IMG/VR virus record: IMGVR_UViG_3300044213_000107
Coordinates: 1-64,000 of that record
Length of the DNA stretch: 64,000 bases
Strand: one strand, 5' to 3'
Shown here: piece after piece, positions 1-13,008 of the stretch
Layout of the letters: every line of letters begins with the position of its first letter
How positions within the stretch are numbered: the first letter of the stretch is position 1
Notes under the pieces: generated by a model
The model's input: the letters and a program-made list of their open reading frames with translations, nothing else
What the model was told of the DNA's origin: nothing
Databases searched by the model: none
Program-made: the position numbers and the translations under genes

Positions 1-389
1 GACAATGCTTCACAACCCAATGCTGGTAGAATAGTTAGTTTGGCTAACTTGCGTCGTTCCATTTCTTTGTAGAACTCAAGTTCTGGGTCATCTTGGGCAA
101 CTAAGGTAGTATGGTCAAATTGATCTTCTAAAATCTTTTTAAGTTCTTTAAGACCGCCATAGTCTGCGGCCCAGTTGCGAACATCTAAATCGTTGGTACC
201 AAAGTAAAACTTCATACTGAACGAATAGCCATGATTTAAATTACAATGACTATCGGCACGCCATTGACGATAAGCACATGGAAATGCGTCGATGTATTCC
301 TTTGTGCTTGTATATTTGTATGATACGGGTCCGCGGTATGGAAGATTGTTTTCTAAGTGTGCGATCAGTTCAGATGCCGATGATTTCAT
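1..389 (-). CDS. queD: 6-carboxy-5,6,7,8-tetrahydropterin synthase (QueD/PTPS family), 3' end outside window
   Basis: Own translation from ATG at 389 with GGAG RBS: ...STKEYIDAFPCAYRQWRADSHCNLNHGYSFSMKFYF...DYGGLKELKKILEDQFDHTTLV; has the C-x3-H-G-Y and FDH motifs of QueD. Absent from the ORF track because truncated. Confidence 0.85.
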   Translation of the reverse strand, partial: MKSSASELIAHLENNLPYRGPVSYKYTSTKEYIDAFPCAYRQWRADSHCNLNHGYSFSMKFYFGTNDLDVRNWAADYGGLKELKKILEDQFDHTTLVAQDDPELEFYKEMERRKLAKLTILPALGCEAL

Positions 390-426
390 GCTGTTTCTCC
401 TATGTTAAATTTTAGCATAGGCGGCG

Positions 427-462
427 GAGTTTGTATACCGGGACGACGCTCTAAAGTCCGGT
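427..462 (-). ncRNA. preQ1-I-like riboswitch candidate in the queD leader
   Basis: ACCGG-ACUUUAGAGCGUCGUC-CCGGU-AUACAAA-CUC: 5-bp stem, loop ending in C, A-rich tail whose CUC can pair with loop GAG (H-type pseudoknot). Followed by a CCUAUG..CAUAGG hairpin (399-421) overlapping the queD RBS. Confidence 0.5.
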
Positions 463-472
463 TGTGGCTAAG

Positions 473-1021
473 TCAGCAATAACTATAGCCGGGCGTATTG
501 TTTCGCAACCGTTCCCTTAGTGTATCCTTGGATATTTTTAAGGCTTTCGCGGCGTAGTTAGCACATTCAAAAACGCCAATTGGTGTACTAACTTTTTTAG
601 CACGAGGGTTGTTACCTCCTGCTTTTTGTTTTTTATATAAATCAATAGTCTCGGGCCTATGGGTCTTACCATAAAAAGAGTTTTGTTCTTTGATCTTACC
701 CCAATTTGGATTATTTTCTTTTTTCATACCGGGACTTCCGGGCGCCTTGCCATCCTTGCCATTTTCGGGTCTTAAATTTGCCCACTCCTTAGACTCTACA
801 ATATTGTTTTTTTCTGAAAAATCTAAAGCAAATTCTTCACATAACTCTGGATCAGTAAACTCCCACACATTTATGGTGTCAATATCTTTGCCGTGAGTTT
901 TGAGATGACGCCTCCAATATTTTCCAGAACCTAGATAAACATATGGATCTTTTGTAACAGTCATACCAAAATATTTTAATCCTGTGATTTTATGTTGTTT
1001 AACATATAGATAAATTTTCAT
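473..1021 (-). mobile_element. Free-standing GIY-YIG (Seg-like) homing endonuclease with NUMOD3-type motif
   Basis: N-terminal IYLY..KITGLKYFG..YLGSG and E..WANL motifs; NSFYGKTH NUMOD3-like repeat; C-terminal HTH; own TAAATA promoter and AGGAG RBS. Confidence 0.85.
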
Positions 1022-1050
1022 AGATATCTCCTATGTTTATTTATCTAATT

Positions 1051-1077
1051 AGCGGGATGAATGCCGGAAAGGCCGCT
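1051..1077 (-). repeat. Diverged second copy of the queD leader stem-loop, upstream of the endonuclease
   Basis: AGCGG-CCUUUCCGGCAUUCAUC-CCGCU resembles ACCGG-ACUUUAGAGCGUCGUC-CCGGU with compensatory stem changes; both leaders end in AACATAGGAGA. Confidence 0.55.
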
Positions 1078-1088
1078 TGAAAAAATAT

Positions 1089-1424
1089 TTATCCTTCACG
1101 CTCATAGCGATCCATTGTTTCTTGCATGTTGTGCGATTCAACTTGATCCATGAACTTTAATAAGAACATGCTAGCAAGGGAGGCTGCCGAACCGGGGATT
1201 CTTAATAAGATATGACCTGTACCATCCTTCATATGATAACTGGGTTTGGCGCTGCCTAGTTGTACATGCCGAGTTTGTTGTTTACGTCCACGATGATCAT
1301 ACACTTCCGTAAGCCATGCATTTCCACCTTGTAGTACAAACCAATGACCTATGTCATCAGTGAGTTCTCGGACCGTGATGGTTATTTCATAATTAACTCG
1401 GCACCCTGGGGGCAATTGTATCAT
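1089..1424 (-). CDS. Hypothetical protein (start revised to MIQLPPG)
   Basis: ATGA overlap with upstream gene stop. Confidence 0.6.
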   Translation of the reverse strand: MIQLPPGCRVNYEITITVRELTDDIGHWFVLQGGNAWLTEVYDHRGRKQQTRHVQLGSAKPSYHMKDGTGHILLRIPGSAASLASMFLLKFMDQVESHNMQETMDRYEREG

Positions 1425-1876
1425 TGTGCACGAGCCTTTAGATATTCTTCGTGTTGTACCCAACCACTTTTTGTTAAGAAACCCCATTCTCTACGATGTG
1501 GGCCAGGTATAAACAGTGTCCATGTTTCTACTGTGGGATCTAGTTCGATACGATGATAACTGGTAGCACCACAGGTTCTAAAACTACCAGTACCACGCCA
1601 TGTGCAGGTTTCTGTTATTTTGTTGCCTTGGGCATCAAATACTGGCATCCATTCATAGTAGCCACCTTTTAAGATAACAGTGGCATAAGGCCAAGGATGA
1701 TCATGCACGTCATCGGGATCTGACTTAAGAAACTTATGCACAAATATATTAAAAGGGAACCAGGTGCGATCTTTAAGGAATACATAATATCTTTCTAAAT
1801 AGGGTTCATTATCAACCCTGTCCATAATAATACGTTTGCGGCCTAAGCGTTCAAGTAGAGTTAGAAATCGATTCAT
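1421..1876 (-). CDS. Cupin-fold protein
   Basis: HDHPW...ILKGGY.E and YHRIEL motifs; start revised to MNRF after AAGG RBS. Confidence 0.7.
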   Translation of the reverse strand: MNRFLTLLERLGRKRIIMDRVDNEPYLERYYVFLKDRTWFPFNIFVHKFLKSDPDDVHDHPWPYATVILKGGYYEWMPVFDAQGNKITETCTWRGTGSFRTCGATSYHRIELDPTVETWTLFIPGPHRREWGFLTKSGWVQHEEYLKARAQ

Positions 1877-2645
1877 TGCGTACCTTTTGGTTTGCTGTGT
1901 TGACTGCTTCAAAAAGACCCAATGTGGTATTGGTTTTTTGTAGTGTAGCAATTATAGCACATACATCCTTGGGAAAGCAAGCACCACCGTAGCCAAAAGC
2001 GCCATCTGGACCAGGAACCGCAAAATGACTGGAGCCCATGCGGGTATCATGTTGTAAAGCTGCCACAAAATCTGTCCAATTTGCTCCAACCGCTTGACTC
2101 AACTGGAAAAATTGATTCATGAACATTACTTTTGCAGCCAAAAAAGTATTCATAAAGTACTTGATCATGCTGGCGGTTGTAATGTCTGTTATTGTTAATG
2201 GAACCTTGGTGTTCATGGCACTGGCTTCAAACACATGCATAATATCCTGAGCTCCAGCATTTTGTCCAATAACAATAAATTCAGGATTAAGATAATCTTG
2301 TATTGCCCGACTTGCAACTAAAAACTCTGGTACATGATACACGTTTGGTTGTGGGTAATGTTGCCAAAATTCCGGTTCTGCAGTACTTTTGACAATAATA
2401 GGTCCTGTGTAATTTAACTCTAATAGACAATCTACTACTGATTCTACGATACTGGTATTACAAGATCCATCTGAGTTACTAGGTGTTGGTACGCATACAA
2501 AAATTACATCAGCGTTAATCAGATGTTCTATATCAACTCCGCCTGCGATTGCAGGATCGCAGAATAAAACACTGTGACTGGTTCCTAGATAACTGGCCTG
2601 TACTGCTTTTCCAACATAACCTAACCCAACTATGCCTATGTTCAT
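1851..2645 (-). CDS. ugd: UDP-glucose/GDP-mannose dehydrogenase family (short form)
   Basis: GLGYVG Rossmann motif, VCVPTP, KST, PEFL, KY..N.FLA.K, GYGGACFPKD. Confidence 0.9.
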   Translation of the reverse strand: MNIGIVGLGYVGKAVQASYLGTSHSVLFCDPAIAGGVDIEHLINADVIFVCVPTPSNSDGSCNTSIVESVVDCLLELNYTGPIIVKSTAEPEFWQHYPQPNVYHVPEFLVASRAIQDYLNPEFIVIGQNAGAQDIMHVFEASAMNTKVPLTITDITTASMIKYFMNTFLAAKVMFMNQFFQLSQAVGANWTDFVAALQHDTRMGSSHFAVPGPDGAFGYGGACFPKDVCAIIATLQKTNTTLGLFEAVNTANQKVRNESISNST

Positions 2646-2977
2646 TGCGGATCTTTCTTGGCAGGTTCTTCGATAAATCTTGGACTAGGTCCGATATTGC
2701 TAGAGATAGCCCCAAATGCTCGTTTGACTGCATAAAGTGGGAAACTCACAATAGCCAATGAAAAAATTAATATCAAGCCAACAATAGAAACTATGTTCAT
2801 AAATGCAGTAATTAACATTTCGAGCACAATATTCCAAAATCCTTTTATTCCCAATCTCATCAATTGATCGGAATCGTCGCCATCGTTAAAATGTCTGATA
2901 TGATCAATAAATTGATTTTTAGTTGTACCAACAGATCCTTTTAATACGTCTAGTAGTCCGCGATATAGTTTTAACAT
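2642..2977 (-). CDS. Hypothetical membrane protein
   Basis: Long hydrophobic stretch; ATGA coupling. Confidence 0.6.
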   Translation of the reverse strand: MLKLYRGLLDVLKGSVGTTKNQFIDHIRHFNDGDDSDQLMRLGIKGFWNIVLEMLITAFMNIVSIVGLILIFSLAIVSFPLYAVKRAFGAISSNIGPSPRFIEEPAKKDPQ

Positions 2978-2978
2978 T

Positions 2979-3266
2979 TTAGTACCTCAGTGTTTCCATG
3001 GTGATGATTTGCGCGATACGATGTGTGACATCGGGGTCGTCGGCTGGTATTACATGTAATTTTGCATTGTGACGATCGGCCTTGCGATCGTATTCGTTAA
3101 ACTCCAATATGGTGCCACCTGATGCATGGTAAACAGTGAACCGCATACCATCACTGTTAATTCTATCGTTGGCTATGGGTTTTGATGCAGCGATAACGCC
3201 ATTTGACTCAACATCGGCATAGCTGTTGACCCATCGACCGAATTTGTAAAGTAATCTTCTAATCAT
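2979..3266 (-). CDS. Hypothetical protein
   Basis: AAGGA RBS; tight packing. Confidence 0.6.
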   Translation of the reverse strand: MIRRLLYKFGRWVNSYADVESNGVIAASKPIANDRINSDGMRFTVYHASGGTILEFNEYDRKADRHNAKLHVIPADDPDVTHRIAQIITMETLRY

Positions 3267-3275
3267 AATGTTTCC

Positions 3276-4019
3276 TTAGCATGAATATTCTTGTTGCAGT
3301 TTTACGTTATCAAAAAACTCTTTTTTAGTTCCAGCATCGTCTTTAAATGCACCCTTGAGTACAGTAGTTTGCGTAAGACTGCTTTTGGCCATAATGCCAC
3401 GGTTCTCACAACATCCATGTGTCATTTGCATATAAACGCCTACGTCTGCGGCTCCTGTGGCACGTTGGATTTCCCGAGCAATTTCATTACAAAGTTCCTC
3501 CTGGAGAGTACCTCTTCGGGCACACCATTGTGCGATTCTTGAATATTTACTAAGTCCGATAAGTGTTTGTGCGGCAATAATACCAATATAAGCAACACCA
3601 ACCACAGGCTGGTGATGATGGCTGCAAACGCTACGCAACTCGCTGCGAACAACAAGCATGCCTTCGTAACGTTCCGACGAATCATTGGGAAATGCGGTTG
3701 GGTCTGGTCCTGGTTCATATCTTCCACTCATTATTTCTGTTATGTACATTTTAGCAAGACGTCTAGCAGTCCCTCGACTGCTAGGGTCAGTTTCACGATC
3801 AATAAGCAAACGATCAAGCACTAGCTCAAATGCTTCTGCGGCTTCGTTGATTAGACGTTCTTTATCGCCTTCTTTAAGATACTCGCTGATGTTGTCGTTG
3901 GCCCAAAAGCGTTTACCTTCACGGCGCATTTTAAAACGTAAATAATCGCCTAAATATGCTTCTTCGTATCCGCCATCTCCGGCCATGGCGTCTAATCCTG
4001 TTTCTGTTTTATCTGTCAA
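3276..4019 (-). CDS. folE: GTP cyclohydrolase I
   Basis: SVCSHHHQP, GLSKYSRI, LQEEL, HGCCENRG motifs; start revised to TTG at 4019 following GGAG RBS. Confidence 0.95.
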   Translation of the reverse strand: MTDKTETGLDAMAGDGGYEEAYLGDYLRFKMRREGKRFWANDNISEYLKEGDKERLINEAAEAFELVLDRLLIDRETDPSSRGTARRLAKMYITEIMSGRYEPGPDPTAFPNDSSERYEGMLVVRSELRSVCSHHHQPVVGVAYIGIIAAQTLIGLSKYSRIAQWCARRGTLQEELCNEIAREIQRATGAADVGVYMQMTHGCCENRGIMAKSSLTQTTVLKGAFKDDAGTKKEFFDNVKLQQEYSC

Positions 4020-4048
4020 TTTAATTCTCCGAGTTACTGACGTGGATG

Positions 4049-4648
4049 TCATTTTGTGATTGTAATTTGTCGCAAATCTGGGTAAGCAACAAATTGTGGT
4101 TCTGGATTTAGATCTTTAACTCCTTCGAGTAAAGCCAAACCTTGTTCTGCTTCTTCAATAGTAGGCTTGTAGTGATAACCAATTCTAAAAGTTTTCTGCG
4201 ACTCCCATGGACTAACAGTTAAATCTCTACCATCGTATCTCATTTGTAAGATAGCCTTATATGCTTCTGCATCATCTAATAGTATAGCACCACCACGACC
4301 TATGTGTAAAGGTTTTCCATGTCCAAAACTTACACATTGTATTTGTCCTGGTCTGTACATACCACGTTGCAACAATCTGGCACTATCCCAAATTCTAGTT
4401 TTTCTAAAATGATATTCACCCACCCATTGTTTTTCGTCTTTGGTTTCGTAATAAAATTTAATACCTAGTTTATGCATTAACATTGGAATACTTAGGTATG
4501 TAAAAGGTGTAAATGCACAAAATTCTACACGATCGTAGATAAAGCATAATTCAAGCGCATGCGTACAACAATCAGTCATGATTGCGTAAGGTGCTCCTGT
4601 GAATTCTGCTAATGCTTGTTCGAACTTTAATATTTTTTCAAAACTCAT
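4049..4648 (-). CDS. DegT/DnrJ/EryC1/StrS PLP-dependent aminotransferase-like (short, lacks C-terminal small domain)
   Basis: FEQALAEFTGAPYAI..DCCTHALEL, WDSA, SFGHGKPL..GRGGAI. Confidence 0.8.
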   Translation of the reverse strand: MSFEKILKFEQALAEFTGAPYAIMTDCCTHALELCFIYDRVEFCAFTPFTYLSIPMLMHKLGIKFYYETKDEKQWVGEYHFRKTRIWDSARLLQRGMYRPGQIQCVSFGHGKPLHIGRGGAILLDDAEAYKAILQMRYDGRDLTVSPWESQKTFRIGYHYKPTIEEAEQGLALLEGVKDLNPEPQFVAYPDLRQITITK

Positions 4649-5004
4649 TTTTGACTATCACCTTTGCTTATTCTATAGTTATCTTCCACCGAGTCGGGGG
4701 TACTAACTTCAATAACAGTACCGGCGTCAATGCAAACTAGTTGATGAGGTAGTCCGGGAGGATTATGCCAAACTGAACCCACAGCCAACTCTTGTTCGTG
4801 TAGTTCTGCGGTAGCGGTATCTATCCAACGTACAGTAAACCGACCGCTTTGTACATACCAAGTTTCATCTTTGGTTAAGTGAAAATGCATACTAAATCTA
4901 GCACCAGTATCAAAATTCATCATTTTTCCGCAGTAGAGATCATTGGTGGCCCATATAAATTCAGAGCCCCATCCTTTTTTTACTTGTCCTGTTAGTCTTG
5001 TCAT
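4645..5004 (-). CDS. Cupin, sugar-phosphate isomerase-like
   Basis: KGWGSE, SMHFH..KDETWYV, PHQL, EVST. Confidence 0.75.
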   Translation of the reverse strand: MTRLTGQVKKGWGSEFIWATNDLYCGKMMNFDTGARFSMHFHLTKDETWYVQSGRFTVRWIDTATAELHEQELAVGSVWHNPPGLPHQLVCIDAGTVIEVSTPDSVEDNYRISKGDSQK

Positions 5005-5972
5005 TTTTTTGTATACCATTTATATGCACTGTCAATGATGGTAGAAACATCACTGTATACGGGTTTCCACCCTAGCCCTGTGTTGGCTAAATCAGCATTG
5101 GCTATTAACTTTGCTGGGTCTCCTTCACGTGGTGGCCCTACATATGTTTCTAGACCATATTTCTCTTTAACGTAGTTGACTATTTCTAAATTGCTTATTC
5201 CCGAAGTTGTTCCAAGATTGACTCGATAAGCACCATTTTGCGGATAGTCATCTAGTAAAAAATTAGTGGCCGCAATATGTGCCCATGCTAGATCCCACAC
5301 GTGTATATAATCCCTTATGCATGTACCATCTGGTGTTGCATAATTTCCGCCGTTGATAGTAAACGGTTGTTTATTAATACTGGCTTCTAGAGCACGTGCA
5401 ATGATGTGTGTGGCACCAGGTTCTTGTCCGAGATCGAAGTGCTCGGGCTCGGCACCTGCGGCATTAAAATATCTAAAGGCAACACTATGGATGCCGTATG
5501 CGTGATTATAATCGTCGAGAATATATTCAATCATGGCCTTGGTGCGACCATAGGGACTAATAGGGTTTATTGCGGCCTTTTCGTCGATGGGCATCACTTC
5601 GGGTTCACCGTAAACACTAGCACTACTGCTAAACAGTATAACAGGTTTCTTGTCCATGGTTCGTATCATATTCAACATAGCAATGGTTTTTGCTACATTG
5701 TTATGATAGTATTCGCCAGGGTCCATGACACTGGGTCCTACTAAACTTGTGCCTGCACAATGCACAACAACATCAGGTTCTAGTGTATAGATTGTAGCAA
5801 GTCCTTCGGTACTGGCAAAGTCACCAATATGATAACCATCACAATCTTTTAGAGTATGATCTCGTTGAACACGATCAACGATTACAACACTGTCACCGTT
5901 TTGTTTAAATGCACGAGCTACATGACTACCAATGTAGCCACATCCACCTGTTACTACTATCTTACGTGTCAT
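5001..5972 (-). CDS. galE: UDP-glucose 4-epimerase
   Basis: TGGCGYIGSH, FSSSASVYG, YGRTK, RYFNAAGA, DGTCIRDYIHV. Confidence 0.93.
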   Translation of the reverse strand: MTRKIVVTGGCGYIGSHVARAFKQNGDSVVIVDRVQRDHTLKDCDGYHIGDFASTEGLATIYTLEPDVVVHCAGTSLVGPSVMDPGEYYHNNVAKTIAMLNMIRTMDKKPVILFSSSASVYGEPEVMPIDEKAAINPISPYGRTKAMIEYILDDYNHAYGIHSVAFRYFNAAGAEPEHFDLGQEPGATHIIARALEASINKQPFTINGGNYATPDGTCIRDYIHVWDLAWAHIAATNFLLDDYPQNGAYRVNLGTTSGISNLEIVNYVKEKYGLETYVGPPREGDPAKLIANADLANTGLGWKPVYSDVSTIIDSAYKWYTKK

Positions 5973-6148
5973 AGTTTTGTTTTTAATTCAGCGATTTCGT
6001 CTTTTAAACGAAGTTTTTCTTTTTTAAGTGCTACAATCTGCTCATGATTGCCGTATTGATTTTCTTCAGTGATAATCTTACGATCAAGTGCATCATGCTT
6101 TTCTTGTAGGTGCTTAATATGATTTTGAATCTTTTTTGGTGTGATCAT
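5969..6148 (-). CDS. YdcH/DUF465-like small coiled-coil protein (59 aa, below ORF-track cutoff)
   Basis: MITPKKIQNHIKHLQEKHDALDRKI...LKKEKLRLKDEIAELK. Confidence 0.75.
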   Translation of the reverse strand: MITPKKIQNHIKHLQEKHDALDRKIITEENQYGNHEQIVALKKEKLRLKDEIAELKTKL

Positions 6149-6152
6149 TGTA

Positions 6153-6344
6153 TCAACTATCGAGTTCCATTGTGTTCCATTCTCGGACTACAGCCAGCAT
6201 ATCATCTTCTGTATTGCAAAGAACTTTACAGTTTTTCCAATCGTTTTCGTCATCACGCCCGCCTACTTCGACCATAAAGCCGTTATCGTATCGGTTAATG
6301 GTGATAGTTTCGTTTACTTTTTCTAATTTGCTTAATTGTGCCAT
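6153..6344 (-). CDS. Hypothetical protein
   Basis: AGGAG RBS and CTAAATA upstream. Confidence 0.7.
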   Translation of the reverse strand: MAQLSKLEKVNETITINRYDNGFMVEVGGRDDENDWKNCKVLCNTEDDMLAVVREWNTMELDS

Positions 6345-6358
6345 TTTACTCTCCTTGA

Positions 6359-7549
6359 TTAATATTTAGATTCTAATGTGTGTCGACGATAGTCAATAGA
6401 CGTGCGCAACCATTGTTCTCCTGTGCCTTCTATAATATCACAGATGCGATCAATAGTTCCGTCAGTCCAATCACTGATCTGACCTTGATTGGGATGACGA
6501 TCATGTAATAGTGGCCATAACTTATTCATGGCATCAGCAATGCTCCAAGGTATATACAAACGCTCAGGATCATTTGAAAAAGTTTCGGGGAAACTGCGAT
6601 AAGCAGGGTAAAGGACATTACATCCCAAAGTGTCGGCTTCGGATACAGTATTGCTAACCCAATCTTGCAAAGCACAATTAAATAACACACGAGTATCGTT
6701 AAGAAGATTATAGTAGTCATTCTTTTCTAAATCCTCATAAATTGTTAATAGTCCACGTGCTTGTAGATCTCTAGTACGTGCCATGTAACTGTCGTTATTT
6801 GACTTTAGCTTACTACCTGAAAAAACTGCAAACTCCACAGGATAGTTGGGATATACTGCAGCCCAACGTTCAATCAAGTCCATAAAAAAGTCTGGTGACT
6901 TTTCTTGATCCCAACGTGCCGCAAAGCCTACACGCATTTTTCGTTCCATAAATGGCTTTAGTTCTCCAGACACACGACCACGCACTTCTGCTTTGCCAAA
7001 TGCTAGACCAGAGATGTTGTAGATTGGACAATCCCAACCAGCAACCTTCATATGCATGACCATTTCTTCGTTGGATGCTAGTACAGCACCACCTGAATCA
7101 CGAACTAGTTCGCAGACCATTTTCTCATACAAGCCCATCCACTTGCTCATACCCCAAACATGTACAAAATCATCTGGATCAATTGACTGAGCAAGGCAAC
7201 GAACATATATCCTAGGGCGCAGATGGTTAGGAACCTGATTGATAATGTAAGGAAGGCTTTCGATGCCGGGCTGAAACATGTCTTCAAAATATATAATATC
7301 ATCATGCGTGACTTCTCCGGCTTTCATCATACGCACAAGATTCATAAGTTGGCTCATACCAAAGTATGTGCGACCATGTGCGTCCAAGACCTGTCCGGTG
7401 ACAATTGCTTGATCATTACTAAGCGTATCACCGGGCACTAACAAGTAGTCAATGCCGCGACGCCGAAAGACTGCTTCATTCCAGTCTTGTAGTTGTAGAG
7501 TGTAACGAGCCTTGTATGGCTCTAACCCCATGTAATATAGTTTACGCAT
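6359..7549 (-). CDS. GT-B (family 1/4-like) glycosyltransferase
   Basis: Start revised to MRKLYYMGLE; FAARWDQEK, D-W-V-S-N-T-V-S-E-A..LGC..LYP (E-x7-E-like) motifs. Confidence 0.75.
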   Translation of the reverse strand: MRKLYYMGLEPYKARYTLQLQDWNEAVFRRRGIDYLLVPGDTLSNDQAIVTGQVLDAHGRTYFGMSQLMNLVRMMKAGEVTHDDIIYFEDMFQPGIESLPYIINQVPNHLRPRIYVRCLAQSIDPDDFVHVWGMSKWMGLYEKMVCELVRDSGGAVLASNEEMVMHMKVAGWDCPIYNISGLAFGKAEVRGRVSGELKPFMERKMRVGFAARWDQEKSPDFFMDLIERWAAVYPNYPVEFAVFSGSKLKSNNDSYMARTRDLQARGLLTIYEDLEKNDYYNLLNDTRVLFNCALQDWVSNTVSEADTLGCNVLYPAYRSFPETFSNDPERLYIPWSIADAMNKLWPLLHDRHPNQGQISDWTDGTIDRICDIIEGTGEQWLRTSIDYRRHTLESKY

Positions 7550-7550
7550 A

Positions 7551-7829
7551 TTAACGTGTCCGATAGCTGCGGTTGTAAGGTTGATTATTATTTCTTGATT
7601 GCCAAGGGCGCTGTTCTCTGGGTTCTTGTCCCCAATGATTACGAACATGTTTGCCCTGTAGATGACGAACCATGTCTCCATATGGACTACGTTCGTTGTA
7701 TAAGTGTCTTTCGTCAAATGTGTGACCAAAATCACAACAGAATTGTCGATAACGTTCCAAGTCTTCAAAGATATCCGAGACTTCAGGCTTCATACGTAGA
7801 TATTTGTTGAGCCATTCTGATTTTGCCAT
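7551..7829 (-). CDS. Hypothetical protein
   Basis: AAGGA RBS; fits between neighbours. Confidence 0.7.
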   Translation of the reverse strand: MAKSEWLNKYLRMKPEVSDIFEDLERYRQFCCDFGHTFDERHLYNERSPYGDMVRHLQGKHVRNHWGQEPREQRPWQSRNNNQPYNRSYRTR

Positions 7830-7841
7830 TTTTATTTTTCC

Positions 7842-8282
7842 TTAAATGGATACTAGTTGTGGGCGGTGAGTTTCATATTTAATGAGTGCGCCGTTCTCAC
7901 CATCTTCGGCTACCTCAATCCAAACTGTACGGCTTGGATATCTATCAGCGATTTGTAAGTATAAATCGTCTGCAATCATTTCACAACTCTTATAATCGAG
8001 TGCAAGAATATTATCTTTGTATAAGTTTTCTAACCATCTCTTGAACTGTATAAATTCAATATCGCGATCATTATGCACGACACTAATATAGACCCTAAAG
8101 TGGAAAATGTGACGATGCGGAGTGCCAAGAAAACTAACATCATATTCATCTCCAGTGGCTAGTGCGGGGTCAGTTGCGGCTGCCGGATAACAATGAATAC
8201 CTTCTTTTTGGAATGTCACTGAAATCATTCGATCAGCACGTTGCATGATCCTGTCTGCAGTATCTCTTTGTTCTTGATTCAT
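7842..8282 (-). CDS. QueD/PTPS-like T-fold protein
   Basis: GIH.YP, PHRHIFHF, RDIEF, SCEMIA, V.EDGENGA resemble the PTPS metal-binding and C-terminal motifs. Confidence 0.55.
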   Translation of the reverse strand: MNQEQRDTADRIMQRADRMISVTFQKEGIHCYPAAATDPALATGDEYDVSFLGTPHRHIFHFRVYISVVHNDRDIEFIQFKRWLENLYKDNILALDYKSCEMIADDLYLQIADRYPSRTVWIEVAEDGENGALIKYETHRPQLVSI

Positions 8283-8316
8283 AATTAAATGTTGAAGTTG
8301 TGTTGTATTTAGATTG

Positions 8317-8345
8317 ATTATACGACAAAGAAAAATTATTGTCTA
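8317..8345 (-). promoter_or_regulatory. sigma70-type promoter, with CTAAATA late element just downstream
   Basis: TAGACA-17bp-TATAAT. Confidence 0.7.
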
Positions 8346-9505
8346 GTTGCATAGATGTCCGAAAATACTTTTTTACTATCTAGATTCCGAGATAAATCAG
8401 TTTCCTCAAAAAATTTAAATATATCGTGATGTTCAATAACACCAGTCTTTAAAAAATCAATTAGTACCCGAACATTAGTACCAAATCGGTCTTCTCCAGC
8501 ATATCTTTCAGCAATTTCTATAGTATCTTTGATATATGTTTTTGGTAACATCCTCGGATCTAAATACGAAGGGTGGTGACCACCGTTAATATAGTTAACA
8601 TTTAAATTTTCTCTTGTAAATCCTAAAGAAAATAAGTAGTCAACAAAATTAAAAAAACTTTTTGTGTTTAAGGCTAGATATACCATATTAAATGCTATTT
8701 CTTGTGTTTTAGGTATATTATTTTTTAAAAATTTTAAATTAGTATCAAAAGTTGACCATACTCCGGGATATCTAATGTATTCATATCTCTCGTACATGTC
8801 TTCGGCACTAATTAACCACATTACATTCTTAAATTTTAATAACAGATTAAAAATTTTATTATTTTCAATCATTGAAAGATTTGTGTTAACTAATATTTTA
8901 CAATTAGGGTTAACTTCTAATAATCTTTCAAGAATTATTTCATTCTCTTTAATTAATAATGGTTCGCCGCCTGCCATATAAATTTTTTCTAATGTTGCAG
9001 CATTATCGCAAAAATACTGTATTAATTTAGAAATTGCAGCATCGTCGCTAACAGGGAATATCTTTTTTTCTGCAGCCCAAGTTGAGCTTAAATCCTCACT
9101 ACAATATACACATGCATAATTACACGTGTTTCTAAATCTTAAATCTGCGTATCTAAGCTCAAATTTATCAGGATTATCATAAATTGTTTTATCGAGATGC
9201 TTAAAAATGTTAAGCATAATATATCTTAAATAATTGTTGATATTTCCAGCATTATCTCCGATCGCAAGATTTTTTGGCGGATAACATCTACTGCACCCGT
9301 CGACTCGTTTGCCATCTAACATATTTTTACGTATACTGATGTTATAATCGCTGTTAATTATTTCTTCAATGGCATTATTTTTAATATTTCCAAGTCGATT
9401 TCTTGCAATACAACAAGTATCAGTAAGTCCATCTGGTTCTACGTATATGCTGGTCCATGGTAATGGACAAAAGGCATCATTGCCCCAATATTGATCTTCA
9501 GTCAT
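8336..9505 (-). CDS. Radical SAM protein with N-terminal Cys-rich (Twitch/SPASM-like) domain
   Basis: CNYACVYC, GGEPL, N-terminal CPLPW..CC..CSRC. Confidence 0.9.
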   Translation of the reverse strand: MTEDQYWGNDAFCPLPWTSIYVEPDGLTDTCCIARNRLGNIKNNAIEEIINSDYNISIRKNMLDGKRVDGCSRCYPPKNLAIGDNAGNINNYLRYIMLNIFKHLDKTIYDNPDKFELRYADLRFRNTCNYACVYCSEDLSSTWAAEKKIFPVSDDAAISKLIQYFCDNAATLEKIYMAGGEPLLIKENEIILERLLEVNPNCKILVNTNLSMIENNKIFNLLLKFKNVMWLISAEDMYERYEYIRYPGVWSTFDTNLKFLKNNIPKTQEIAFNMVYLALNTKSFFNFVDYLFSLGFTRENLNVNYINGGHHPSYLDPRMLPKTYIKDTIEIAERYAGEDRFGTNVRVLIDFLKTGVIEHHDIFKFFEETDLSRNLDSKKVFSDIYATRQ

Positions 9506-10017
9506 TATATTATTTTATCCTCACTGTATTTACTCCAATCGGTAAACGCAGATCTATTCATTAAACTATGTAGGCTATAACACCACACACCTGGATTAGT
9601 TGCTTGAAAATCTCGATCATCAAGTTTAAGTGTAGCATTATAACCAAATTTATTAATGTAAGGAAGCTTAACACTAATCATTGGAATAAAGTTATTATAC
9701 TCACATAAGGAACAATTAGTAAGTCCTTCGACTAGTGCAACATCAATATCCAAAGTACATAGATAACCTTTATTTAAAAAATACTTAATAGTTTCTTCCC
9801 ATACTGCCCAATCTGCTGTACCAGGCACCGTTGGAAAACTCATATTTGCACCAAAGAATATATGTTCAACAGGATCACTGCCGCAGGTTAAATGCACTGC
9901 AATATCATCTGTAGTTTGTACACCCACAACAAACATAGTATATTTTCCAAATGCAGGAGTATGTTCTACTTCTGTTCCATAGAAGAATTGTGTATTTTCG
10001 TGTCCTTCTCTATTCAT
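9505..10017 (-). CDS. Conserved-looking hypothetical protein directly downstream of the TGT-like gene
   Basis: F.G.EVEH.P, HIFFGAN, KLDD.DF..TNPGVW. Confidence 0.7.
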   Translation of the reverse strand: MNREGHENTQFFYGTEVEHTPAFGKYTMFVVGVQTTDDIAVHLTCGSDPVEHIFFGANMSFPTVPGTADWAVWEETIKYFLNKGYLCTLDIDVALVEGLTNCSLCEYNNFIPMISVKLPYINKFGYNATLKLDDRDFQATNPGVWCYSLHSLMNRSAFTDWSKYSEDKII

Positions 10018-10023
10018 ATAACA

Positions 10024-11595
10024 TTAACCTTGGGCGTGTTGTATTAATTCATTGGCTTTGCTACGACCATTAGTAGTCTTTTTACCTTTAAATCCTCTGG
10101 TGCCAATGATCTGATTCCAGTATCCTGCTGGACCAGAATATCTATGTGTATTGATAATTTCTATGCTGGCTTCACGAGAAGGTGCAGAAAATATACGTTC
10201 CACAATGTCTTCAAAATATTCATATAACCCACCATCGTGCCGCATCATAGCAGGATGCTCACCGGAGTCAAATCTACGATTTGCTTCTTGTACTGCAGTT
10301 ATATGTTGATATACATTATGTCCCATTAGCAACATATAACTAAAACTATCCCAAGATGTTTTGCCCCATTTGCCATTTTTATTTAGATCCGGCAACACAT
10401 CATACATTTCAGGGTCTTTAAAGTTATCCTCTGTTAGTACGACACCAGGCTTAGGAACTCCGGGTTTATAGATACAAATGTCTCGCATTGTTAACATATC
10501 GCTAACGGGAGATTCTTGCCAATTATCGTATACGCGGTCTGCTACTACCCCTTGGCTCCATTTACGAGTGTCTGAGGCGTATTTCTTGTTGTCGGCACTG
10601 GGAGCCATTCTATAACTCCATTTACCATCTTGTGGAAACACGTTTTCGAAGTAAACCTGTCCATTTGCTGTAGCGAGGAATGGGCTGGCACAATCAAAGG
10701 ATATAGTAAACGCCGGATTGGCATATTTTCTAACTGCCCTTTGAATCACGGTGAGTAGCACAGCCCATTCCAACTTTGACGTACCTAAGAAGTGCATCCA
10801 ATCATGTACACCTTCTTGCAACAAATTATCGTATTTTAAACTTATAATTCTTTTTAACACTAACTCAATATCGCACATGTTTTGTCCACCCATGGCCCAG
10901 CCATCAAAGTGTGTGTCCGGATAAACTGCAGGATCACAATAGTGTTTCATAGTCTGGTACCATTCTTCGGCACTGGCATGATTATCACCTTGCAGAACGT
11001 TTAAGATTTTAGTACCGCCATTATTTTTTCCACGGCGATGCTGCATAAAGTATTCATTGTTATACTTTGTTGCTGCTACAGCTTCTGGCAATGTTTTAAT
11101 CTTACATGCATCTGATGCTTTTTTATCATGAATAACCCAAGTTGGAATATCTAAGGTCATGCAGTAATCAGATATATTATCTAACCAATTAAAAACAGCT
11201 GCACGTTTAGCTTCGGCCTTGGGGCATCCTGAGCCGGCACGCCAATCACCTTCCCATAGTCCTTTAGCAATCTGGAATCCACCTGAATCACCTAGCATAA
11301 AAGTTCCGGGTTCGCGATTACGGATCATGTCTTCGCTCCAGTCTTGCTTGCTTAAATCCAAATTGGCATGCCCACCTGAATAAAGACTCCAACGGTAAGG
11401 AAAAAGACCTTTTGACGAATTAAGCCAGTTTAACTGTTCCATGTCTGTTAGGCCTTGCGGAAATCGAGCAGGGTCTACATAAGGATTTTGCGGATCTTGT
11501 CTTTGTTTTCCTATAAATGTAGCATAGAATCCACTGATAGCCGGGAGGTAAACGGCGTAGTCTTTTTGTTTTGCGGTTAAGTCATCTTGTGCCAT
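10024..11595 (-). CDS. Queuine tRNA-ribosyltransferase (TGT)-fold transglycosylase, DpdA-like candidate
   Basis: GDSGGFQ, MTLD, VLQG, GWAMGG, HFLG, SFD motifs in TGT order; start revised to MAQDD. Confidence 0.8.
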   Translation of the reverse strand: MAQDDLTAKQKDYAVYLPAISGFYATFIGKQRQDPQNPYVDPARFPQGLTDMEQLNWLNSSKGLFPYRWSLYSGGHANLDLSKQDWSEDMIRNREPGTFMLGDSGGFQIAKGLWEGDWRAGSGCPKAEAKRAAVFNWLDNISDYCMTLDIPTWVIHDKKASDACKIKTLPEAVAATKYNNEYFMQHRRGKNNGGTKILNVLQGDNHASAEEWYQTMKHYCDPAVYPDTHFDGWAMGGQNMCDIELVLKRIISLKYDNLLQEGVHDWMHFLGTSKLEWAVLLTVIQRAVRKYANPAFTISFDCASPFLATANGQVYFENVFPQDGKWSYRMAPSADNKKYASDTRKWSQGVVADRVYDNWQESPVSDMLTMRDICIYKPGVPKPGVVLTEDNFKDPEMYDVLPDLNKNGKWGKTSWDSFSYMLLMGHNVYQHITAVQEANRRFDSGEHPAMMRHDGGLYEYFEDIVERIFSAPSREASIEIINTHRYSGPAGYWNQIIGTRGFKGKKTTNGRSKANELIQHAQG

Positions 11596-12223
11596 AAAAT
11601 TCAACTTGTTCAATTAATTCGTAGTCTAATTGAAAATAATTTTTCAATTGCCGTTGATATTTAGAATTTTTTTCTAACTCTTGTTTAAAAATATTTTTAA
11701 TTCTTTGTCTTTCGGGACTGTTTTCACTTACATGCTGATAGTCGTATCTATGGTATCCATTTTCGCCTAGGTGTTTAGCAACAAACTCACCAAAGTTTTG
11801 TCTATAATTTTTGTCGCATAGAAAAAATGTAGCACGAGCAGTATCTATACCCGATATAAAGTTTACTTGACGTTCAGTATGGTCGTCAAATGCAATTCTA
11901 TCAAATACCAAATCAAAGAAACCACGACCTAAAAAAGCCAAGTCTATGTTTTTATGATATAAAGTAAAATATTCGCCAATGCCACTTAACCAACGATCAA
12001 CAGGATCTCGTAGAACTATTATGGCATGTTTATAAGGTGATACCATATCCAAGTGGTAGTTGTAAAACTCCCAGCCCCAGTCTTGCAAGTTTGGCTTGGT
12101 CCAGGAGCTGGCATTTTTAGGAATATGGATGTACATAAGGTCAGTGGTGGCGCTGGTCATGCATTCGCCATAACAATGACCTTTATGTTGCCATTGATTT
12201 AAAAAGTCTGCGTTGACAATCAC
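11582..12223 (-). CDS. Sulfotransferase-like protein
   Basis: HIPKNASSW (PAPS 5'-loop like) and LRDPVDRWLS; GTG start overlapping upstream stop. Confidence 0.65.
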   Translation of the reverse strand: MIVNADFLNQWQHKGHCYGECMTSATTDLMYIHIPKNASSWTKPNLQDWGWEFYNYHLDMVSPYKHAIIVLRDPVDRWLSGIGEYFTLYHKNIDLAFLGRGFFDLVFDRIAFDDHTERQVNFISGIDTARATFFLCDKNYRQNFGEFVAKHLGENGYHRYDYQHVSENSPERQRIKNIFKQELEKNSKYQRQLKNYFQLDYELIEQVEFYGTR

Positions 12224-12951
12224 TTGGTTTGTGCAGGAATAATATATGTGTATACACACAGACCTGAATCGACTTCAATCTCTGCAGCACCTTGATCGCT
12301 AAAGCGCATCTTTTTATCACCAGATAGTGCAAGAATATTCATAACAACTGCAACGGGCCAGTTCCATGATTTTGCAATAGTTCCAGCAACATTGCTTTCA
12401 AATGTAAAGTTGCCTGAATGGTTTGCAGGATCACCAAAGTAAAACTTTAAACTACCGTTTTCTGTTTTGGCTGTAAACGTAGTTTCTTCACTGTTTGCAC
12501 TTGCTTGCAAACGCAAACGCTGAATACCGTTTACGCTCGGCGTAAAGTCTACACCCCACTTAACCTGGGCCATGGTAAATGATTTTAGTTTATCATTTAC
12601 TACTTCTGCACTCATGTATCGGTAATCATTTTTAAAGTCACCGGCTTGATTTTCGAAATGAACTCCAACAGGAACATCTACCCCATCTTTATTTTGTAGA
12701 GTTGGAGTAATAGTTGCATTTTCTTTGTATTCTGGAATGTTAAGGATGGTAGTTAATTTTCCTAGATTAGGCATACCAAATGTACCAACAAACTCGGGCA
12801 CTGGATTGGCAAACTTTGCTTTTAAAATAACACTGCGATCTTCGGCAATAGCCGAAATCACAGTTTCAGTATCTGATCCAACAACTTTAACAAGGTCAAT
12901 ACAACCAAGGCGATGCGTATGCTCAACGATATCTAATAGATAATCTTTCAT
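12220..12951 (-). CDS. Probable DNA polymerase sliding clamp (gp45-like)
   Basis: Size, beta-rich two-domain pattern, C-terminal Y.YII.A, near the polymerase; clamp loader also in window. Confidence 0.6.
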   Translation of the reverse strand: MKDYLLDIVEHTHRLGCIDLVKVVGSDTETVISAIAEDRSVILKAKFANPVPEFVGTFGMPNLGKLTTILNIPEYKENATITPTLQNKDGVDVPVGVHFENQAGDFKNDYRYMSAEVVNDKLKSFTMAQVKWGVDFTPSVNGIQRLRLQASANSEETTFTAKTENGSLKFYFGDPANHSGNFTFESNVAGTIAKSWNWPVAVVMNILALSGDKKMRFSDQGAAEIEVDSGLCVYTYIIPAQTK

Positions 12952-12978
12952 TAAAACTCCTAATAATGTAATATGAAT

Positions 12979-13008
12979 AGTTTAACAGATTGTATTTAGA
13001 TCTGTCAA
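12979..13008 (-). promoter_or_regulatory. Nested sigma70 and late promoter inside an inverted repeat
   Basis: TTGACA-18bp-TAAACT containing CTAAATA; TTGACAGAT...ATCTGTTAA can pair. Confidence 0.55.

What the first reader, a model, noticed from the sequence alone, without database searches (positions are those of the whole stretch)
1..11595. Deazaguanine pathway interleaved with nucleotide-sugar enzymes: candidate glycosylated 7-deazaguanine DNA hypermodification
Seen in one co-oriented block: QueD, FolE, TGT-fold transglycosylase, GT-B glycosyltransferase, Ugd, GalE, DegT-like aminotransferase and two cupins, adjacent to the clamp and polymerase genes. Known: FolE/QueD/QueE(/QueC) plus DpdA insert 7-deazaguanines into phage DNA. 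Inference: the inserted base is further decorated with a uronic or amino sugar. Alternatively the sugar genes serve surface or virion glycosylation, or the TGT acts on tRNA. QueE and QueC are not seen in this window.
Basis: partly seen in the sequence, partly recalled or inferred. Interest (0 to 1): 0.65.

Follow-up and report, generated by a model that had tools for sequence, protein, structure and literature searches.

The report
Deazaguanine DNA module with dedicated glycosyltransferase
A jumbo phage carries the genes that replace guanine in its DNA with a 7-deazaguanine, and in at least eight phage lineages these genes sit beside one glycosyltransferase family, so the swapped base may also carry a sugar, which has never been reported for a DNA purine.

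Summary
The gene block is real. Window 1-11.6 kb (minus strand) of a 260-kb jumbo-phage contig encodes QueD (cut by the contig end), FolE, a TGT-fold protein (VIA-align Z 17.4 to tRNA-guanine transglycosylases, with DSGGFQ and FDC motifs), a GT-B/GT4 glycosyltransferase (Z about 20, EX7E-like motif), GalE, a short Ugd, a mini DegT and two cupins, next to a clamp-like gene and PolB.

7842-8282 is DpdL (motif LxxxHRHxF), the QueD paralog proposed to decarboxylate CDG to 7-deazaguanine. Absence of QueC is therefore the known DpdL-type design. QueE lies 0.4-3.5 kb beyond QueD in relatives, just off this contig.

The new point is the GT4 family. Every detectable member sits beside dpdL/dpdA/queE: PA5oct, Phosso, ACP17, BUDD/X1, BCSR5, BUCT-ZZ01 and two metagenomic sub-lineages (68/68 and 58/58 loci). 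It accompanies three DpdA types, and in most relatives it overlaps GalE by 4 nt. phiST, whose DNA is proven dDG, lacks it.

A deazaguanine DNA modification is likely (about 0.85). Glycosylation of that base is plausible but unproven (about 0.45). Peripheral sugar genes vary, and the phage has another sugar island elsewhere.

The parts
10024..11613 (-). DpdA-like TGT-fold transglycosylase (PA5oct type). The likely start is the ATG at 11592. Proposed to exchange guanine in phage DNA for a 7-deazaguanine base.
   Evidence: Invariant DSGGFQ, LDxP, GWxMGG, HxLG and SFDCASP motifs. The AF2 model (pLDDT 79) matches only TGTs, at Z 17.4. hhalign to the DpdA2 type gives E 2.4e-5. Homologs lie beside que genes in PA5oct and Vibrio phage 2.275.O.
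9505..10017 (-). Conserved 170-aa protein of unknown fold that always follows the DpdA-like gene.
   Evidence: Present in 58/58 loci of the sister lineage. A homolog, ACP17 gp122, sits directly upstream of DpdA2 (E 6e-21). No Pfam, PDB or Atlas lead.
8336..9505 (-). N-terminal-twitch radical SAM protein. A variable insert, probably not part of the module.
   Evidence: NF033640 at 258 bits. Present in only 4/28 relatives. One of 12 paralogs on the contig, with GC 0.30.
7842..8282 (-). DpdL, a QueD paralog proposed to be the CDG decarboxylase that yields 7-deazaguanine.
   Evidence: Motif LxxxHRHxF, with invariant H30, H56 and H58, as defined in PMC10516641. Homologous to phiST CGPG_00067 (tblastn 2e-9, HMM 1e-23).
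7551..7829 (-). Small conserved ORF (92 aa) between dpdL and the GT gene; function unknown.
   Evidence: Found in 24/29 relatives that carry the GT, and in the sister lineage.
6359..7549 (-). GT-B/GT4 glycosyltransferase dedicated to the DpdL-type module.
   Evidence: The AF2 model (pLDDT 75) matches GT4 enzymes BshA, MshA and BGluT at Z 19-20.6. Invariant D295-x7-E303. The BCSR5 homolog passes Pfam Glycos_transf_1. Linkage to the module is shown.
5001..5972 (-). UDP-glucose 4-epimerase GalE, the probable supplier of the GT donor sugar.
   Evidence: TIGR01179 at 300 bits, above the cut-off. Present in 26/29 relatives, starting within -75 to +2 nt of the GT stop in 23 of them, mostly as a 4-nt overlap.
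4645..5019 (-). Cupin A, a small cupin that is nearly unique to this phage.
   Evidence: Pfam Cupin_2. Found in 0/80 relatives. Overlaps GalE by 19 nt and mini-DegT by 4 nt.
4049..4648 (-). Mini DegT-like protein (199 aa) that keeps the PLP Asp and Lys.
   Evidence: Pfam DegT. The family is conserved at 192-234 aa, with invariant D88 and K112. Overlaps FolE by 4 nt.
3276..4052 (-). GTP cyclohydrolase I (FolE), the first step of the pathway.
   Evidence: Pfam E 1e-35; NCBIfam FolE models.
1851..2645 (-). Ugd-short: a nucleotide-sugar dehydrogenase homolog without the C-terminal UDP-binding domain.
   Evidence: Pfam N-terminal and central domains only. TIGR03026 positions 71-300 of 413. The family of 31 sequences keeps GxGxxG, K162, N166, C223 and D227. 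A homolog of the same short length lies in the G001 module.
1421..1951 (-). Cupin B (phrog_4786, labelled 'cysteine dioxygenase'-like). Near-universal in the sister lineage's module.
   Evidence: PHROG E 6e-37. Present in 57/58 loci.
473..1021 (-). I-TevI-like homing endonuclease; a mobile insert, not part of the pathway.
   Evidence: Pfam I-TevI DNA-binding domain and NUMOD1 (both weak, below the cut-off), and NCBIfam group I intron endonuclease (also below the cut-off). Found in 1/80 relatives.
3..389 (-). QueD (CPH4 synthase), with its C-terminus cut by the contig end.
   Evidence: Pfam PTPS. Full-length relatives are 184 aa. The CxxxHGY variant is shared with the phiST and ACP17 QueD.
12220..16642 (-). 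Context: clamp-like gene (12220-12951), SAM methyltransferase (13005-13961) and family B DNA polymerase (13982-16642).

Best explanation
The block is a DpdL-type (QueC-less) 7-deazaguanine DNA-modification module of an uncultured jumbo phage, extended by a dedicated GT4 glycosyltransferase.

Proposed route:
1. FolE, QueD and QueE turn GTP into 7-carboxy-7-deazaguanine (CDG). QueE lies just off the contig.
2. DpdL converts CDG to 7-deazaguanine or a close derivative.
3. The TGT-fold DpdA-like enzyme exchanges this base for guanine in replicated phage DNA.
4. The GT4 enzyme then transfers a sugar to the deazaguanine, either on DNA or on the free base before insertion. The donor is a UDP-hexose supplied by the translationally coupled GalE and possibly tailored by mini-DegT, Ugd-short and the cupins.

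The product would shield G-containing sites from host nucleases.

Shown here: gene identities, folds, motifs and conserved linkage. Inferred: every chemical step, the DNA target and the sugar. My confidence that the module modifies DNA with a deazaguanine is about 0.85. My confidence that the GT glycosylates that base is about 0.45. The figure below is for the whole statement.
For: TGT fold and motifs
- VIA-align Z 17.4, 301 aligned residues. The catalytic-type DSGGFQ and FDC motifs are invariant.

Link to deazaguanine genes
- Homologs sit with QueF/QueC/YhhQ/FolE in Vibrio phage 2.275.O, and with QueE in PA5oct.
- Iyer et al. list a deazaguanine synthesis/incorporation system in PA5oct.

DpdL and the QueC-less design
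- The DpdL motif is present, and the protein is homologous to phiST DpdL.
- QueE lies downstream of QueD in relatives, and no QueC is found anywhere.

GT fold and motif
- GT4 fold with an EX7E-like motif.

GT linkage to the module
- Every GT-family member found in 50,697 phage records lies within 3 kb of dpdL.
- It accompanies three DpdA types: PA5oct type, DpdA2 in ACP17/ZZ01, and BUDD.
- In metagenomic contigs, DpdL is present in 68/68 loci, and DpdA plus p170 in 58/58.
- In the sister sub-lineage the GT has been replaced in place by a distant homolog (22% identity) while DpdL stays 69% identical.

Link between the GT and sugar genes
- GT and GalE overlap or abut in 23 of 26 relatives.
- In the window, GalE, cupin A, mini-DegT and FolE overlap by 19, 4 and 4 nt.

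Other points
- No thymidylate-synthase-family hydroxymethylase is present that could supply an hmC or hmU acceptor.
- Chemical precedent: the glycosyltransferase HuiG (its BGC family carries PF13439 GTs) glycosylates a 7-deazapurine base in huimycin biosynthesis.
Against: - No chemistry was measured.
- 7-deazaguanine itself offers no obvious hydroxyl for O-glycosylation. The sugar would have to sit on N2, or on a C7 side chain that DpdL-type chemistry is not known to leave.
- phiST makes plain dDG without any GT. Five DpdL lineages have no GT within 8 kb.
- The closest structural neighbours of the GT act on small molecules (BshA, MshA, BGluT, SenB, LmbT), not DNA.
- The window's own GT and DpdA-like proteins fail the Pfam thresholds.
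- Ugd and DegT are truncated forms of unknown activity.
- The phage has other sugar and GT genes elsewhere.
- The metagenomic loci are related phages, so the large counts are not independent. Independence rests on about eight lineages.
Confidence: 0.45

Rival explanations
1. Plain dDG system. The module only installs unsubstituted 7-deazaguanine (or dCDG) in DNA, as in phiST. The GT4 and the sugar genes serve something else, such as glycosylation of a virion or host structure, or a non-catalytic or auxiliary role for DpdA/DpdL.
For: - phiST DNA is fully dDG with DpdA3, DpdL and FolE/QueD/QueE and no GT.
- DG has no evident sugar acceptor.
- Jumbo phages often carry sugar genes, and this one has a second island with 4,6-dehydratase, GT17, GT34 and a sugar C-methyltransferase, plus GT1 genes.
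- Cupin A, the methyltransferase and p225 are not conserved.
Against: - It does not explain why this GT family is found only next to dpdL, in about eight lineages and with three DpdA types.
- It does not explain why a distant homolog replaced the GT at the same position.
- Co-expression of dpdL and dpdA from ACP17, a phage that carries this GT, gave no dDG in E. coli, and the authors suggested a missing enzyme.
Confidence: 0.27
2. Small-molecule product. The GT glycosylates a free pterin or deazapurine, in the way BGluT makes biopterin glucoside or HuiG makes huimycin. The glycoside is a metabolite, or a soluble intermediate, rather than a DNA base.
For: - Tetrahydrobiopterin glucosyltransferases are among the tied top structural matches at Z 19.4 (5zes, 9v0l).
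- The nearest solved neighbours use small acceptors.
- FolE and a PTPS-family enzyme also begin pterin synthesis.
- HuiG is a precedent.
Against: - QueE, DpdL and a TGT-fold enzyme are not needed for pterin glycosides.
- The module sits among replication genes in six lineages.
- All GT4 structures score alike (Z 18-20.6), so the BGluT match does not discriminate.
Confidence: 0.13
3. tRNA target. The TGT-fold enzyme inserts the deazaguanine into tRNA, and the GT glycosylates it there, as vertebrate enzymes do for queuosine.
For: - The contig encodes 25 tRNAs, including His-GUG, Tyr-GUA, Asn-GUU and Asp-GUC.
- The best structural matches are tRNA enzymes.
- Glycosylated queuosine exists in tRNA (my own knowledge; see also the abstract of PMC10690763).
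Against: - The protein fails the Pfam TGT model and is only remotely like tRNA TGTs, at 11-18% identity.
- DNA of PA5oct, which carries a homolog, shows G-specific restriction resistance.
- All characterised phage TGT paralogs with que genes act on DNA.
- DpdL-type clusters give dDG in DNA.
Confidence: 0.07

Closest known systems
DpdA3/DpdL dDG system of Cellulophaga phage phiST (Cui et al. 2023, PMC10516641)
   Same: FolE, QueD (the same CxxxHGY variant) and QueE, no QueC, DpdL with the LxxxHRHxF motif, a TGT-fold transglycosylase, and a position next to the polymerase.
   Different: The transglycosylase here is the 520-545-aa PA5oct type, not the 259-aa DpdA3. The module also carries a GT4 glycosyltransferase, a 170-aa partner and sugar-nucleotide genes, all absent from phiST.
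Uncharacterised clusters of Acidovorax phage ACP17 (gp122-gp126), Xanthomonas phages BUDD/X1, Burkholderia phage BCSR5, Pseudomonas phage PA5oct (gp168-gp162), Sinorhizobium phage Phosso and Synechococcus phage BUCT-ZZ01
   Same: The same core of DpdA, GT4, DpdL, QueE and FolE. ACP17 also has the 170-aa protein. PA5oct and Phosso share the DpdA-like type and a related PolB.
   Different: Those phages lack GalE, mini-DegT, Ugd-short and the cupins. Some add a phosphoribosyltransferase. Their DNA chemistry is unknown, apart from the restriction resistance of PA5oct.
HuiG of huimycin biosynthesis and the tetrahydrobiopterin glucosyltransferase BGluT
   Same: GT enzymes of the GT-B/GT4 kind that put a sugar on a 7-deazapurine or a pterin made from GTP through FolE.
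   Different: They act on free small molecules in bacteria. No TGT-fold enzyme or DpdL is involved. No sequence-level relation was shown here.
T4 alpha- and beta-glucosyltransferases (DNA hmC glucosylation)
   Same: Phage GT-B enzymes that decorate a non-canonical base in DNA after replication (my own knowledge; see also PMC13216743, listed).
   Different: Their acceptor is a pyrimidine hydroxymethyl group made by a thymidylate-synthase-family enzyme, which this contig lacks. They belong to different GT families.

Membership tests
TGT/DpdA superfamily | TGT (beta/alpha)8 barrel fold | tested here: met
   The top 50 Foldseek hits are all TGT at prob 1.0. VIA-align gives Z 17.4, rmsd 4.5 A, 301 residues, spanning model residues 13-459.
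TGT/DpdA superfamily | Conserved DSGG(F/Y/L)Q substrate Asp and a catalytic Asp in an FDC/YDS motif | tested here: met
   D109-Q114 and D307 are invariant in 8 and 20 sequences. They align with the DSGGLQ and YDS motifs of the DpdA2 type. That these Asp residues are the catalytic ones rests on my knowledge of bacterial TGT.
TGT/DpdA superfamily | Passes the Pfam PF01702 (TGT) threshold, or matches a named DpdA1-4 subfamily | tested here: not met
   No Pfam or NCBIfam hit. Only a remote profile match to the DpdA2 type (prob 75%, E 2.4e-5). No BLAST hit to nt-1, phiST or CP220. It is best treated as a separate PA5oct-type branch.
TGT/DpdA superfamily | Exchanges guanine in DNA, not tRNA | not testable with these tools
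   Indirect evidence only: the restriction resistance of PA5oct DNA and the position among replication genes.
DpdL (proposed CDG decarboxylase) | QueD paralog in which CxxxHGH is replaced by LxxxHRHxF | tested here: met
   L52-x3-H56-R-H58-x-F60, invariant or nearly so in 15 sequences. The definition is in PMC10516641.
DpdL (proposed CDG decarboxylase) | Homology to phiST CGPG_00067, and a context of DpdA, FolE, QueD and QueE without QueC | tested here: met
   tblastn 2e-9 and HMM 1e-23 to phiST. Context.
DpdL (proposed CDG decarboxylase) | Decarboxylase activity | not testable with these tools
   The activity is also unproven in the literature.
GT-B / GT4 glycosyltransferases | Two-Rossmann GT-B fold | tested here: met
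   Z 19-20.6 over 290-330 residues to BshA, MshA, PimA and sucrose-phosphate synthase.
GT-B / GT4 glycosyltransferases | EX7E motif in the C-terminal domain | tested here: met
   The second Glu is invariant across 8 distant members, and the first position is E or D (D295-x7-E303 here). The motif definition comes from my own knowledge.
GT-B / GT4 glycosyltransferases | Passes the Pfam Glycos_transf_1 threshold | tested here: inconclusive
   The window protein gives no hit. The BCSR5 family member scores 42 bits against a cut-off of 26.4. PA5oct gp167 matches only weakly.
QueE (CDG synthase) | Present in the window or contig | tested here: not met
   Absent from the contig. Found 0.4-3.5 kb past QueD in relatives, and in 43/63 and 54/58 loci. 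Those proteins hit only QueE models, below the cut-offs.
UDP-glucose 6-dehydrogenase (Ugd) | Three domains, including the C-terminal UDP-sugar-binding domain | tested here: not met
   Only the N-terminal and central domains are present. TIGR03026 scores 155 bits against a cut-off of 190, covering positions 71-300 of 413. The short form is conserved and keeps the catalytic K, N, C and D.
DegT/DnrJ/EryC1 aminotransferases | Full fold-type I PLP enzyme of about 360 aa | tested here: not met
   The protein is 199 aa, and only profile positions 163-241 match. The PLP Asp and Lys are kept.
GalE | Equivalog model above its cut-off | tested here: met
   TIGR01179 at 300.4 bits against a cut-off of 262.3.
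T4-type hmC/hmU DNA glycosylation | Thymidylate-synthase-family hydroxymethylase supplying the acceptor | tested here: not met
   PF00303 is absent from the contig, which is 74% complete.

The most novel reading that the evidence does not exclude
These phages carry a glycosylated 7-deazaguanine in their DNA, which would be the first sugar-bearing purine in any genome. It would be made by DpdA, DpdL and a dedicated GT4. The sugar would vary by lineage: GalE and mini-DegT in one sub-lineage, and Ugd-short and cupin B in another. Ugd-short has lost its UDP-binding domain and might oxidise the sugar after transfer. Because the module is abundant in metagenomes (each of the three searches saturated: two protein word searches with more than 7,000 relatives each, and a contig scan at its 600-stretch limit), this would be a common but unseen DNA chemistry.
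Probability: 0.4. Interest if true: 0.85.

Novelty: new variant of a known kind. Interest (0 to 1): 0.68.

Why it matters
Phage 7-deazaguanine DNA modifications are known in eight forms, none carrying a sugar. Sugars on DNA are known only on pyrimidine-derived bases: hmC in T-even phages and base J.

A GT4 family that occurs only beside dpdL and dpdA, in cultured phages of Pseudomonas, Acidovorax, Xanthomonas, Burkholderia, Sinorhizobium and Synechococcus and in a very abundant uncultured jumbo-phage group, points to an undescribed step in this chemistry. It may also be the 'missing enzyme' that prevented reconstitution of the ACP17 pathway.

The question can be tested directly by mass spectrometry on phages that are already in culture. 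The answer bears on restriction and CRISPR evasion, on defence systems that sense hypermodified DNA (END nucleases target PA5oct), and on tools for making nuclease-resistant DNA.

Tried and rejected
- **Sequence-only identification of the TGT-like and GT proteins** failed. Pfam, NCBIfam, PHROGs, phmmer against PDB, and a profile against PDB gave nothing. Structure prediction was needed.
- **The 170-aa protein** gave no lead from Pfam, NCBIfam, the Atlas (scores about 0.82, which is noise) or a PDB profile.
- **A near-identical phage record**: none found.
I used a single protein instead.
- **A first whole-record search with the GT profile** missed the divergent GT in G001. Direct inspection then found it.
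- **Rejected: Ugd and DegT as decayed pseudogenes.** Both short forms are conserved in length and in catalytic residues.
- **Rejected: 13005-13961 as a clamp loader.** It is a methyltransferase.
- **Rejected: the twitch radical SAM as a QueE substitute.** It is present in only 4/28 relatives and is one of 12 scattered paralogs.
- **Rejected: hmC or hmU as the GT acceptor.** No hydroxymethylase is present.
- **Rejected: QueD being inactive** because of its His-to-Tyr changes. phiST, which makes dDG, has the same variant.
- **Considered: a cyanopterin-like glycosylated pterin pathway.** I kept it only as a minor rival, because QueE, DpdL and the TGT-fold enzyme are not explained by it.
- **Not used:** Read laying, the look-up of sequencing runs, complex prediction and the large representative search. 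None could decide the chemistry.

Full report
**What the window is.** The window is the first 64 kb of a 260,723-bp linear IMG/VR viral contig with GC 38.5% and a CheckV completeness estimate of 74%. Its family B polymerase is closest to those of jumbo phages: Sinorhizobium phage Phosso (52%), Agrobacterium phage Atu_ph07 (48%), Vibrio phage 2.275.O (44%) and the 121Q/PBECO4 group (43%). Related contigs reach 330-374 kb. This is therefore an uncultured jumbo phage, not a T4-like phage. All genes from 1 to 16.6 kb lie on the minus strand.

**Checking the observation.**
- QueD/PTPS at 3-389, cut by the contig end.
- FolE at 3276-4052.
- GalE at 5001-5972, above the TIGR01179 equivalog cut-off.
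- Two cupins, at 4645-5019 and 1421-1951.
- A Ugd homolog at 1851-2645 and a DegT homolog at 4049-4648.
- A clamp-like gene and PolB next door.

The two central proteins have no Pfam, NCBIfam, PHROG or PDB sequence match, so I folded them from alignments of relatives.
- **The 529-aa protein (10024-11613).** The model has pLDDT 79 and pTM 0.83. Its 50 best Foldseek matches are all tRNA-guanine transglycosylases. VIA-align gives Z 17.4 over 301 residues. DSGGFQ, LDxP, GWxMGG, HxLG and SFDCASP are invariant across homologs down to 31% identity.
- **The 396-aa protein (6359-7549).** The longer 469-aa ORF is an artefact of an upstream TTG, since relatives are 386-412 aa. The fold is GT-B/GT4, with Z 19-20.6 to BshA, MshA, PimA, sucrose-phosphate synthase and tetrahydrobiopterin glucosyltransferase. 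It has an invariant D-x7-E, which reads E-x7-E in distant family members.

- **DpdL.** The 146-aa gene at 7842-8282 carries L-x3-HRH-x-F and three invariant histidines. This is exactly the signature by which Cui et al. defined DpdL. They describe it as a QueD paralog found in phages with DpdA, FolE, QueD and QueE but no QueC, and propose that it decarboxylates CDG to 7-deazaguanine. Cellulophaga phage phiST DNA is fully dDG (PMC10516641). The window protein is homologous to phiST DpdL.
- **QueC.** Its absence from the contig and from 160 related loci is therefore the expected design, not a gap.
- **QueE.** It is also absent from the contig. In relatives a QueE of the PA5oct/BUCT-ZZ01 type lies 0.4-3.5 kb beyond QueD, which is just past the end of this contig.
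- **QueD variant.** It reads CxxxHGY rather than CxxxHGH. The phiST and ACP17 QueD share this variant, so it is not evidence of inactivity.

**Is the TGT-fold protein a DNA enzyme?**
- Its homolog in Vibrio phage 2.275.O lies beside QueF, a YhhQ-type transporter, QueC, an amidotransferase and FolE. Hutinet et al. had listed that phage among those with que genes but no DpdA.
- In PA5oct the homolog gp168 lies near QueE-like gp162. Iyer et al. noted a deazaguanine synthesis/incorporation system there.
- A profile-profile comparison links the family remotely to the DpdA2-type proteins of ACP17, BUDD, BCSR5 and BUCT-ZZ01, with E 2.4e-5 and the motifs aligned.
- It fails the Pfam TGT model and matches none of the named subfamilies by BLAST.

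I treat it as a PA5oct-type branch of the DpdA/TGT superfamily. The DNA target is inferred, not shown. The contig encodes 25 tRNAs, including all four GUN species, so a tRNA role is not excluded.

**The glycosyltransferase link.** This is the new point.
- tBLASTn of the GT against 50,697 phage records found only five records. A profile search of fetched loci added PA5oct gp167, Phosso and BCSR5. In every case the GT lies within 3 kb of dpdL, and usually next to dpdA and queE.
  - ACP17: gp122 (the 170-aa family), gp123 (DpdA2), gp124 (GT), gp125 (DpdL), gp126 (QueE).
  - BUDD: GT, then an annotated queuine tRNA-ribosyltransferase, DpdL and QueE.
  - PA5oct: gp168, gp167, gp166.
  - Phosso: clamp, DpdL, GT, FolE, QueE.
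  - BCSR5.
  - BUCT-ZZ01: QueE, phosphoribosyltransferase, QueD, FolE, a second GT, DpdA2, DpdL, GT.
- The GT thus accompanies three different DpdA types in phages of six host genera.
- In metagenomic contigs centred on a second GT branch, DpdL was present in 68 of 68 loci with enough flank. DpdA-like and the 170-aa gene were present in 58 of 58.
- In that sister sub-lineage the GT is only 22% identical to the window's GT and is 41% identical to PA5oct gp167. The flanking DpdL is 69% identical. The GT was therefore exchanged for a distant homolog at the same position, which argues that the function is needed there.
- Conversely, five DpdL lineages have no GT within 8 kb: the phiST group, which has proven dDG, and RHph_I1_18, Ahp1, Bakedbeans and D479. 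The GT is an addition to the DpdL pathway, not a requirement for it.
- The metagenomic loci are related phages, so the large counts are not independent. Independence rests on about eight lineages.

**The sugar genes.**
- In the window's sub-lineage, GalE is present in 26 of 29 GT-bearing loci. In 23 of these it starts within -75 to +2 nt of the GT stop, mostly as a 4-nt overlap.
- In the window, two small ORFs separate GT and GalE. GalE, cupin A, mini-DegT and FolE overlap by 19, 4 and 4 nt, so sugar genes and pathway genes are translationally coupled.
- Mini-DegT is a conserved protein of about 200 aa that keeps the PLP Asp and Lys.
- Ugd-short is a conserved protein of about 265 aa with GxGxxG and the catalytic K, N, C and D, but without the UDP-binding domain.
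- Ugd-short (22/58) and cupin B (57/58) belong mainly to the sister sub-lineage's module, which has no GalE or mini-DegT. The accessory set thus changes with the GT type.
- None of these accessories occurs in the cultured phages' modules. Cupin A, the methyltransferase and the 225-aa gene are not conserved.
- The contig also holds a separate sugar island at 179.6-187.6 kb (sugar C-methyltransferase, 4,6-dehydratase, GT17, GT34, epimerases, split transketolase) and GT1 genes near 113-116 kb. A general glycan role for some of the block's sugar genes therefore cannot be dismissed.
- No thymidylate-synthase-family hydroxymethylase is present, so an hmC or hmU acceptor is unlikely.

**Mechanism proposed.**
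1. FolE, QueD and QueE convert GTP to CDG.
2. DpdL gives 7-deazaguanine or a derivative.
3. The DpdA-like enzyme swaps it for G in DNA.
4. The GT4 adds a sugar from a UDP-hexose provided by GalE. This happens either on DNA, as the T4 glucosyltransferases do, or on the free base before insertion, as HuiG does on a deazapurine.

Gene identities, folds, motifs and linkage are shown. All the chemistry is inferred. The weakest point is the acceptor atom, because 7-deazaguanine has no hydroxyl. N2, or a retained C7 substituent, would be required.

I put the deazaguanine DNA modification at about 0.85 and glycosylation of that base at about 0.45. The rivals are:
- plain dDG, with the GT serving another purpose (0.27);
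- a small-molecule glycoside (0.13);
- a tRNA target (0.07).

**Novelty.** DpdA and DpdL systems are known. In the paper library I could search, nothing describes a glycosyltransferase as part of them, or a glycosylated deazaguanine in DNA. I rate this a new variant of a known kind. Cultured phages carry the same core, so nucleoside mass spectrometry can settle the question.

Noticed in passing
window 8336-9505, 16663-17931, 21351-22517, 22499-23635, 43929-45164, 50641-51879, 52814-53869; plus seven more on the contig: The 260-kb contig carries fourteen radical-SAM genes. Twelve are divergent paralogs (22-38% identity) of the N-terminal-twitch radical SAM family NF033640, and most have GC about 0.30 against 0.385 for the genome. 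Such an expansion in a phage is unusual and unexplained.
   Followed up: partly
contig 179.6-187.6 kb (L186) and 113-116 kb (L187), outside the window: A second sugar island: sugar C-methyltransferase, 4,6-dehydratase, GT17, GT34, two more epimerases/reductases, a methyltransferase and a split transketolase. GT1 genes lie elsewhere. The phage probably builds a glycan unrelated to the deazaguanine block.
   Followed up: partly
contig 195.7-204.2 kb, outside the window: A cluster of 25 tRNA genes that includes His-GUG, Tyr-GUA, Asn-GUU and Asp-GUC, the four queuosine-family anticodons.
   Followed up: no
window 1851-2645; L102 13287-14099: A conserved family of 'Ugd-short' proteins, about 265 aa long. 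They keep the NAD motif and the catalytic K, N, C and D of UDP-glucose dehydrogenase but lack the whole UDP-binding domain, which suggests a substrate that is not a nucleotide sugar.
   Followed up: partly
L102 12010-13290 versus window 6359-7549: In a sister sub-lineage the GT between dpdL and folE is a PA5oct-type homolog, only 22% identical to the window's GT, while the neighbouring DpdL is 69% identical. This is an in-place displacement of the GT.
   Followed up: yes
window 473-1021: An I-TevI-like homing endonuclease inserted between QueD and the rest of the block. It is present in only 1 of 80 relatives.
   Followed up: partly
window 13005-13961: A class I SAM-dependent methyltransferase sits between the clamp-like gene and PolB. 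Several relatives lack it at that position, and its target is unknown.
   Followed up: no
window 11582-12259: A 225-aa ORF overlaps the start of the DpdA-like gene. It has no family hit and no homolog in 80 related loci. Its sequence has a sulfotransferase-like look, but I did not verify this.
   Followed up: no
L097 7212-8363 (Vibrio phage Bakedbeans gp176): DpdL is fused to an uncharacterised N-terminal domain of about 260 aa in this phage, which has no GT nearby.
   Followed up: no
L009 12946-13380, L012 7090-7551, and 37/58 loci of the sister lineage: A small phosphoribosyltransferase often accompanies the module but is absent from this contig. It could salvage the guanine released by base exchange, or make a deazapurine nucleotide.
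   Followed up: partly
window 3-389 and A8: The QueD of this phage, phiST, ACP17 and BUCT-ZZ01 has CxxxHGY, plus a Tyr or other residue in place of the first zinc-ligand His. This marks a distinct phage QueD subtype.
   Followed up: partly
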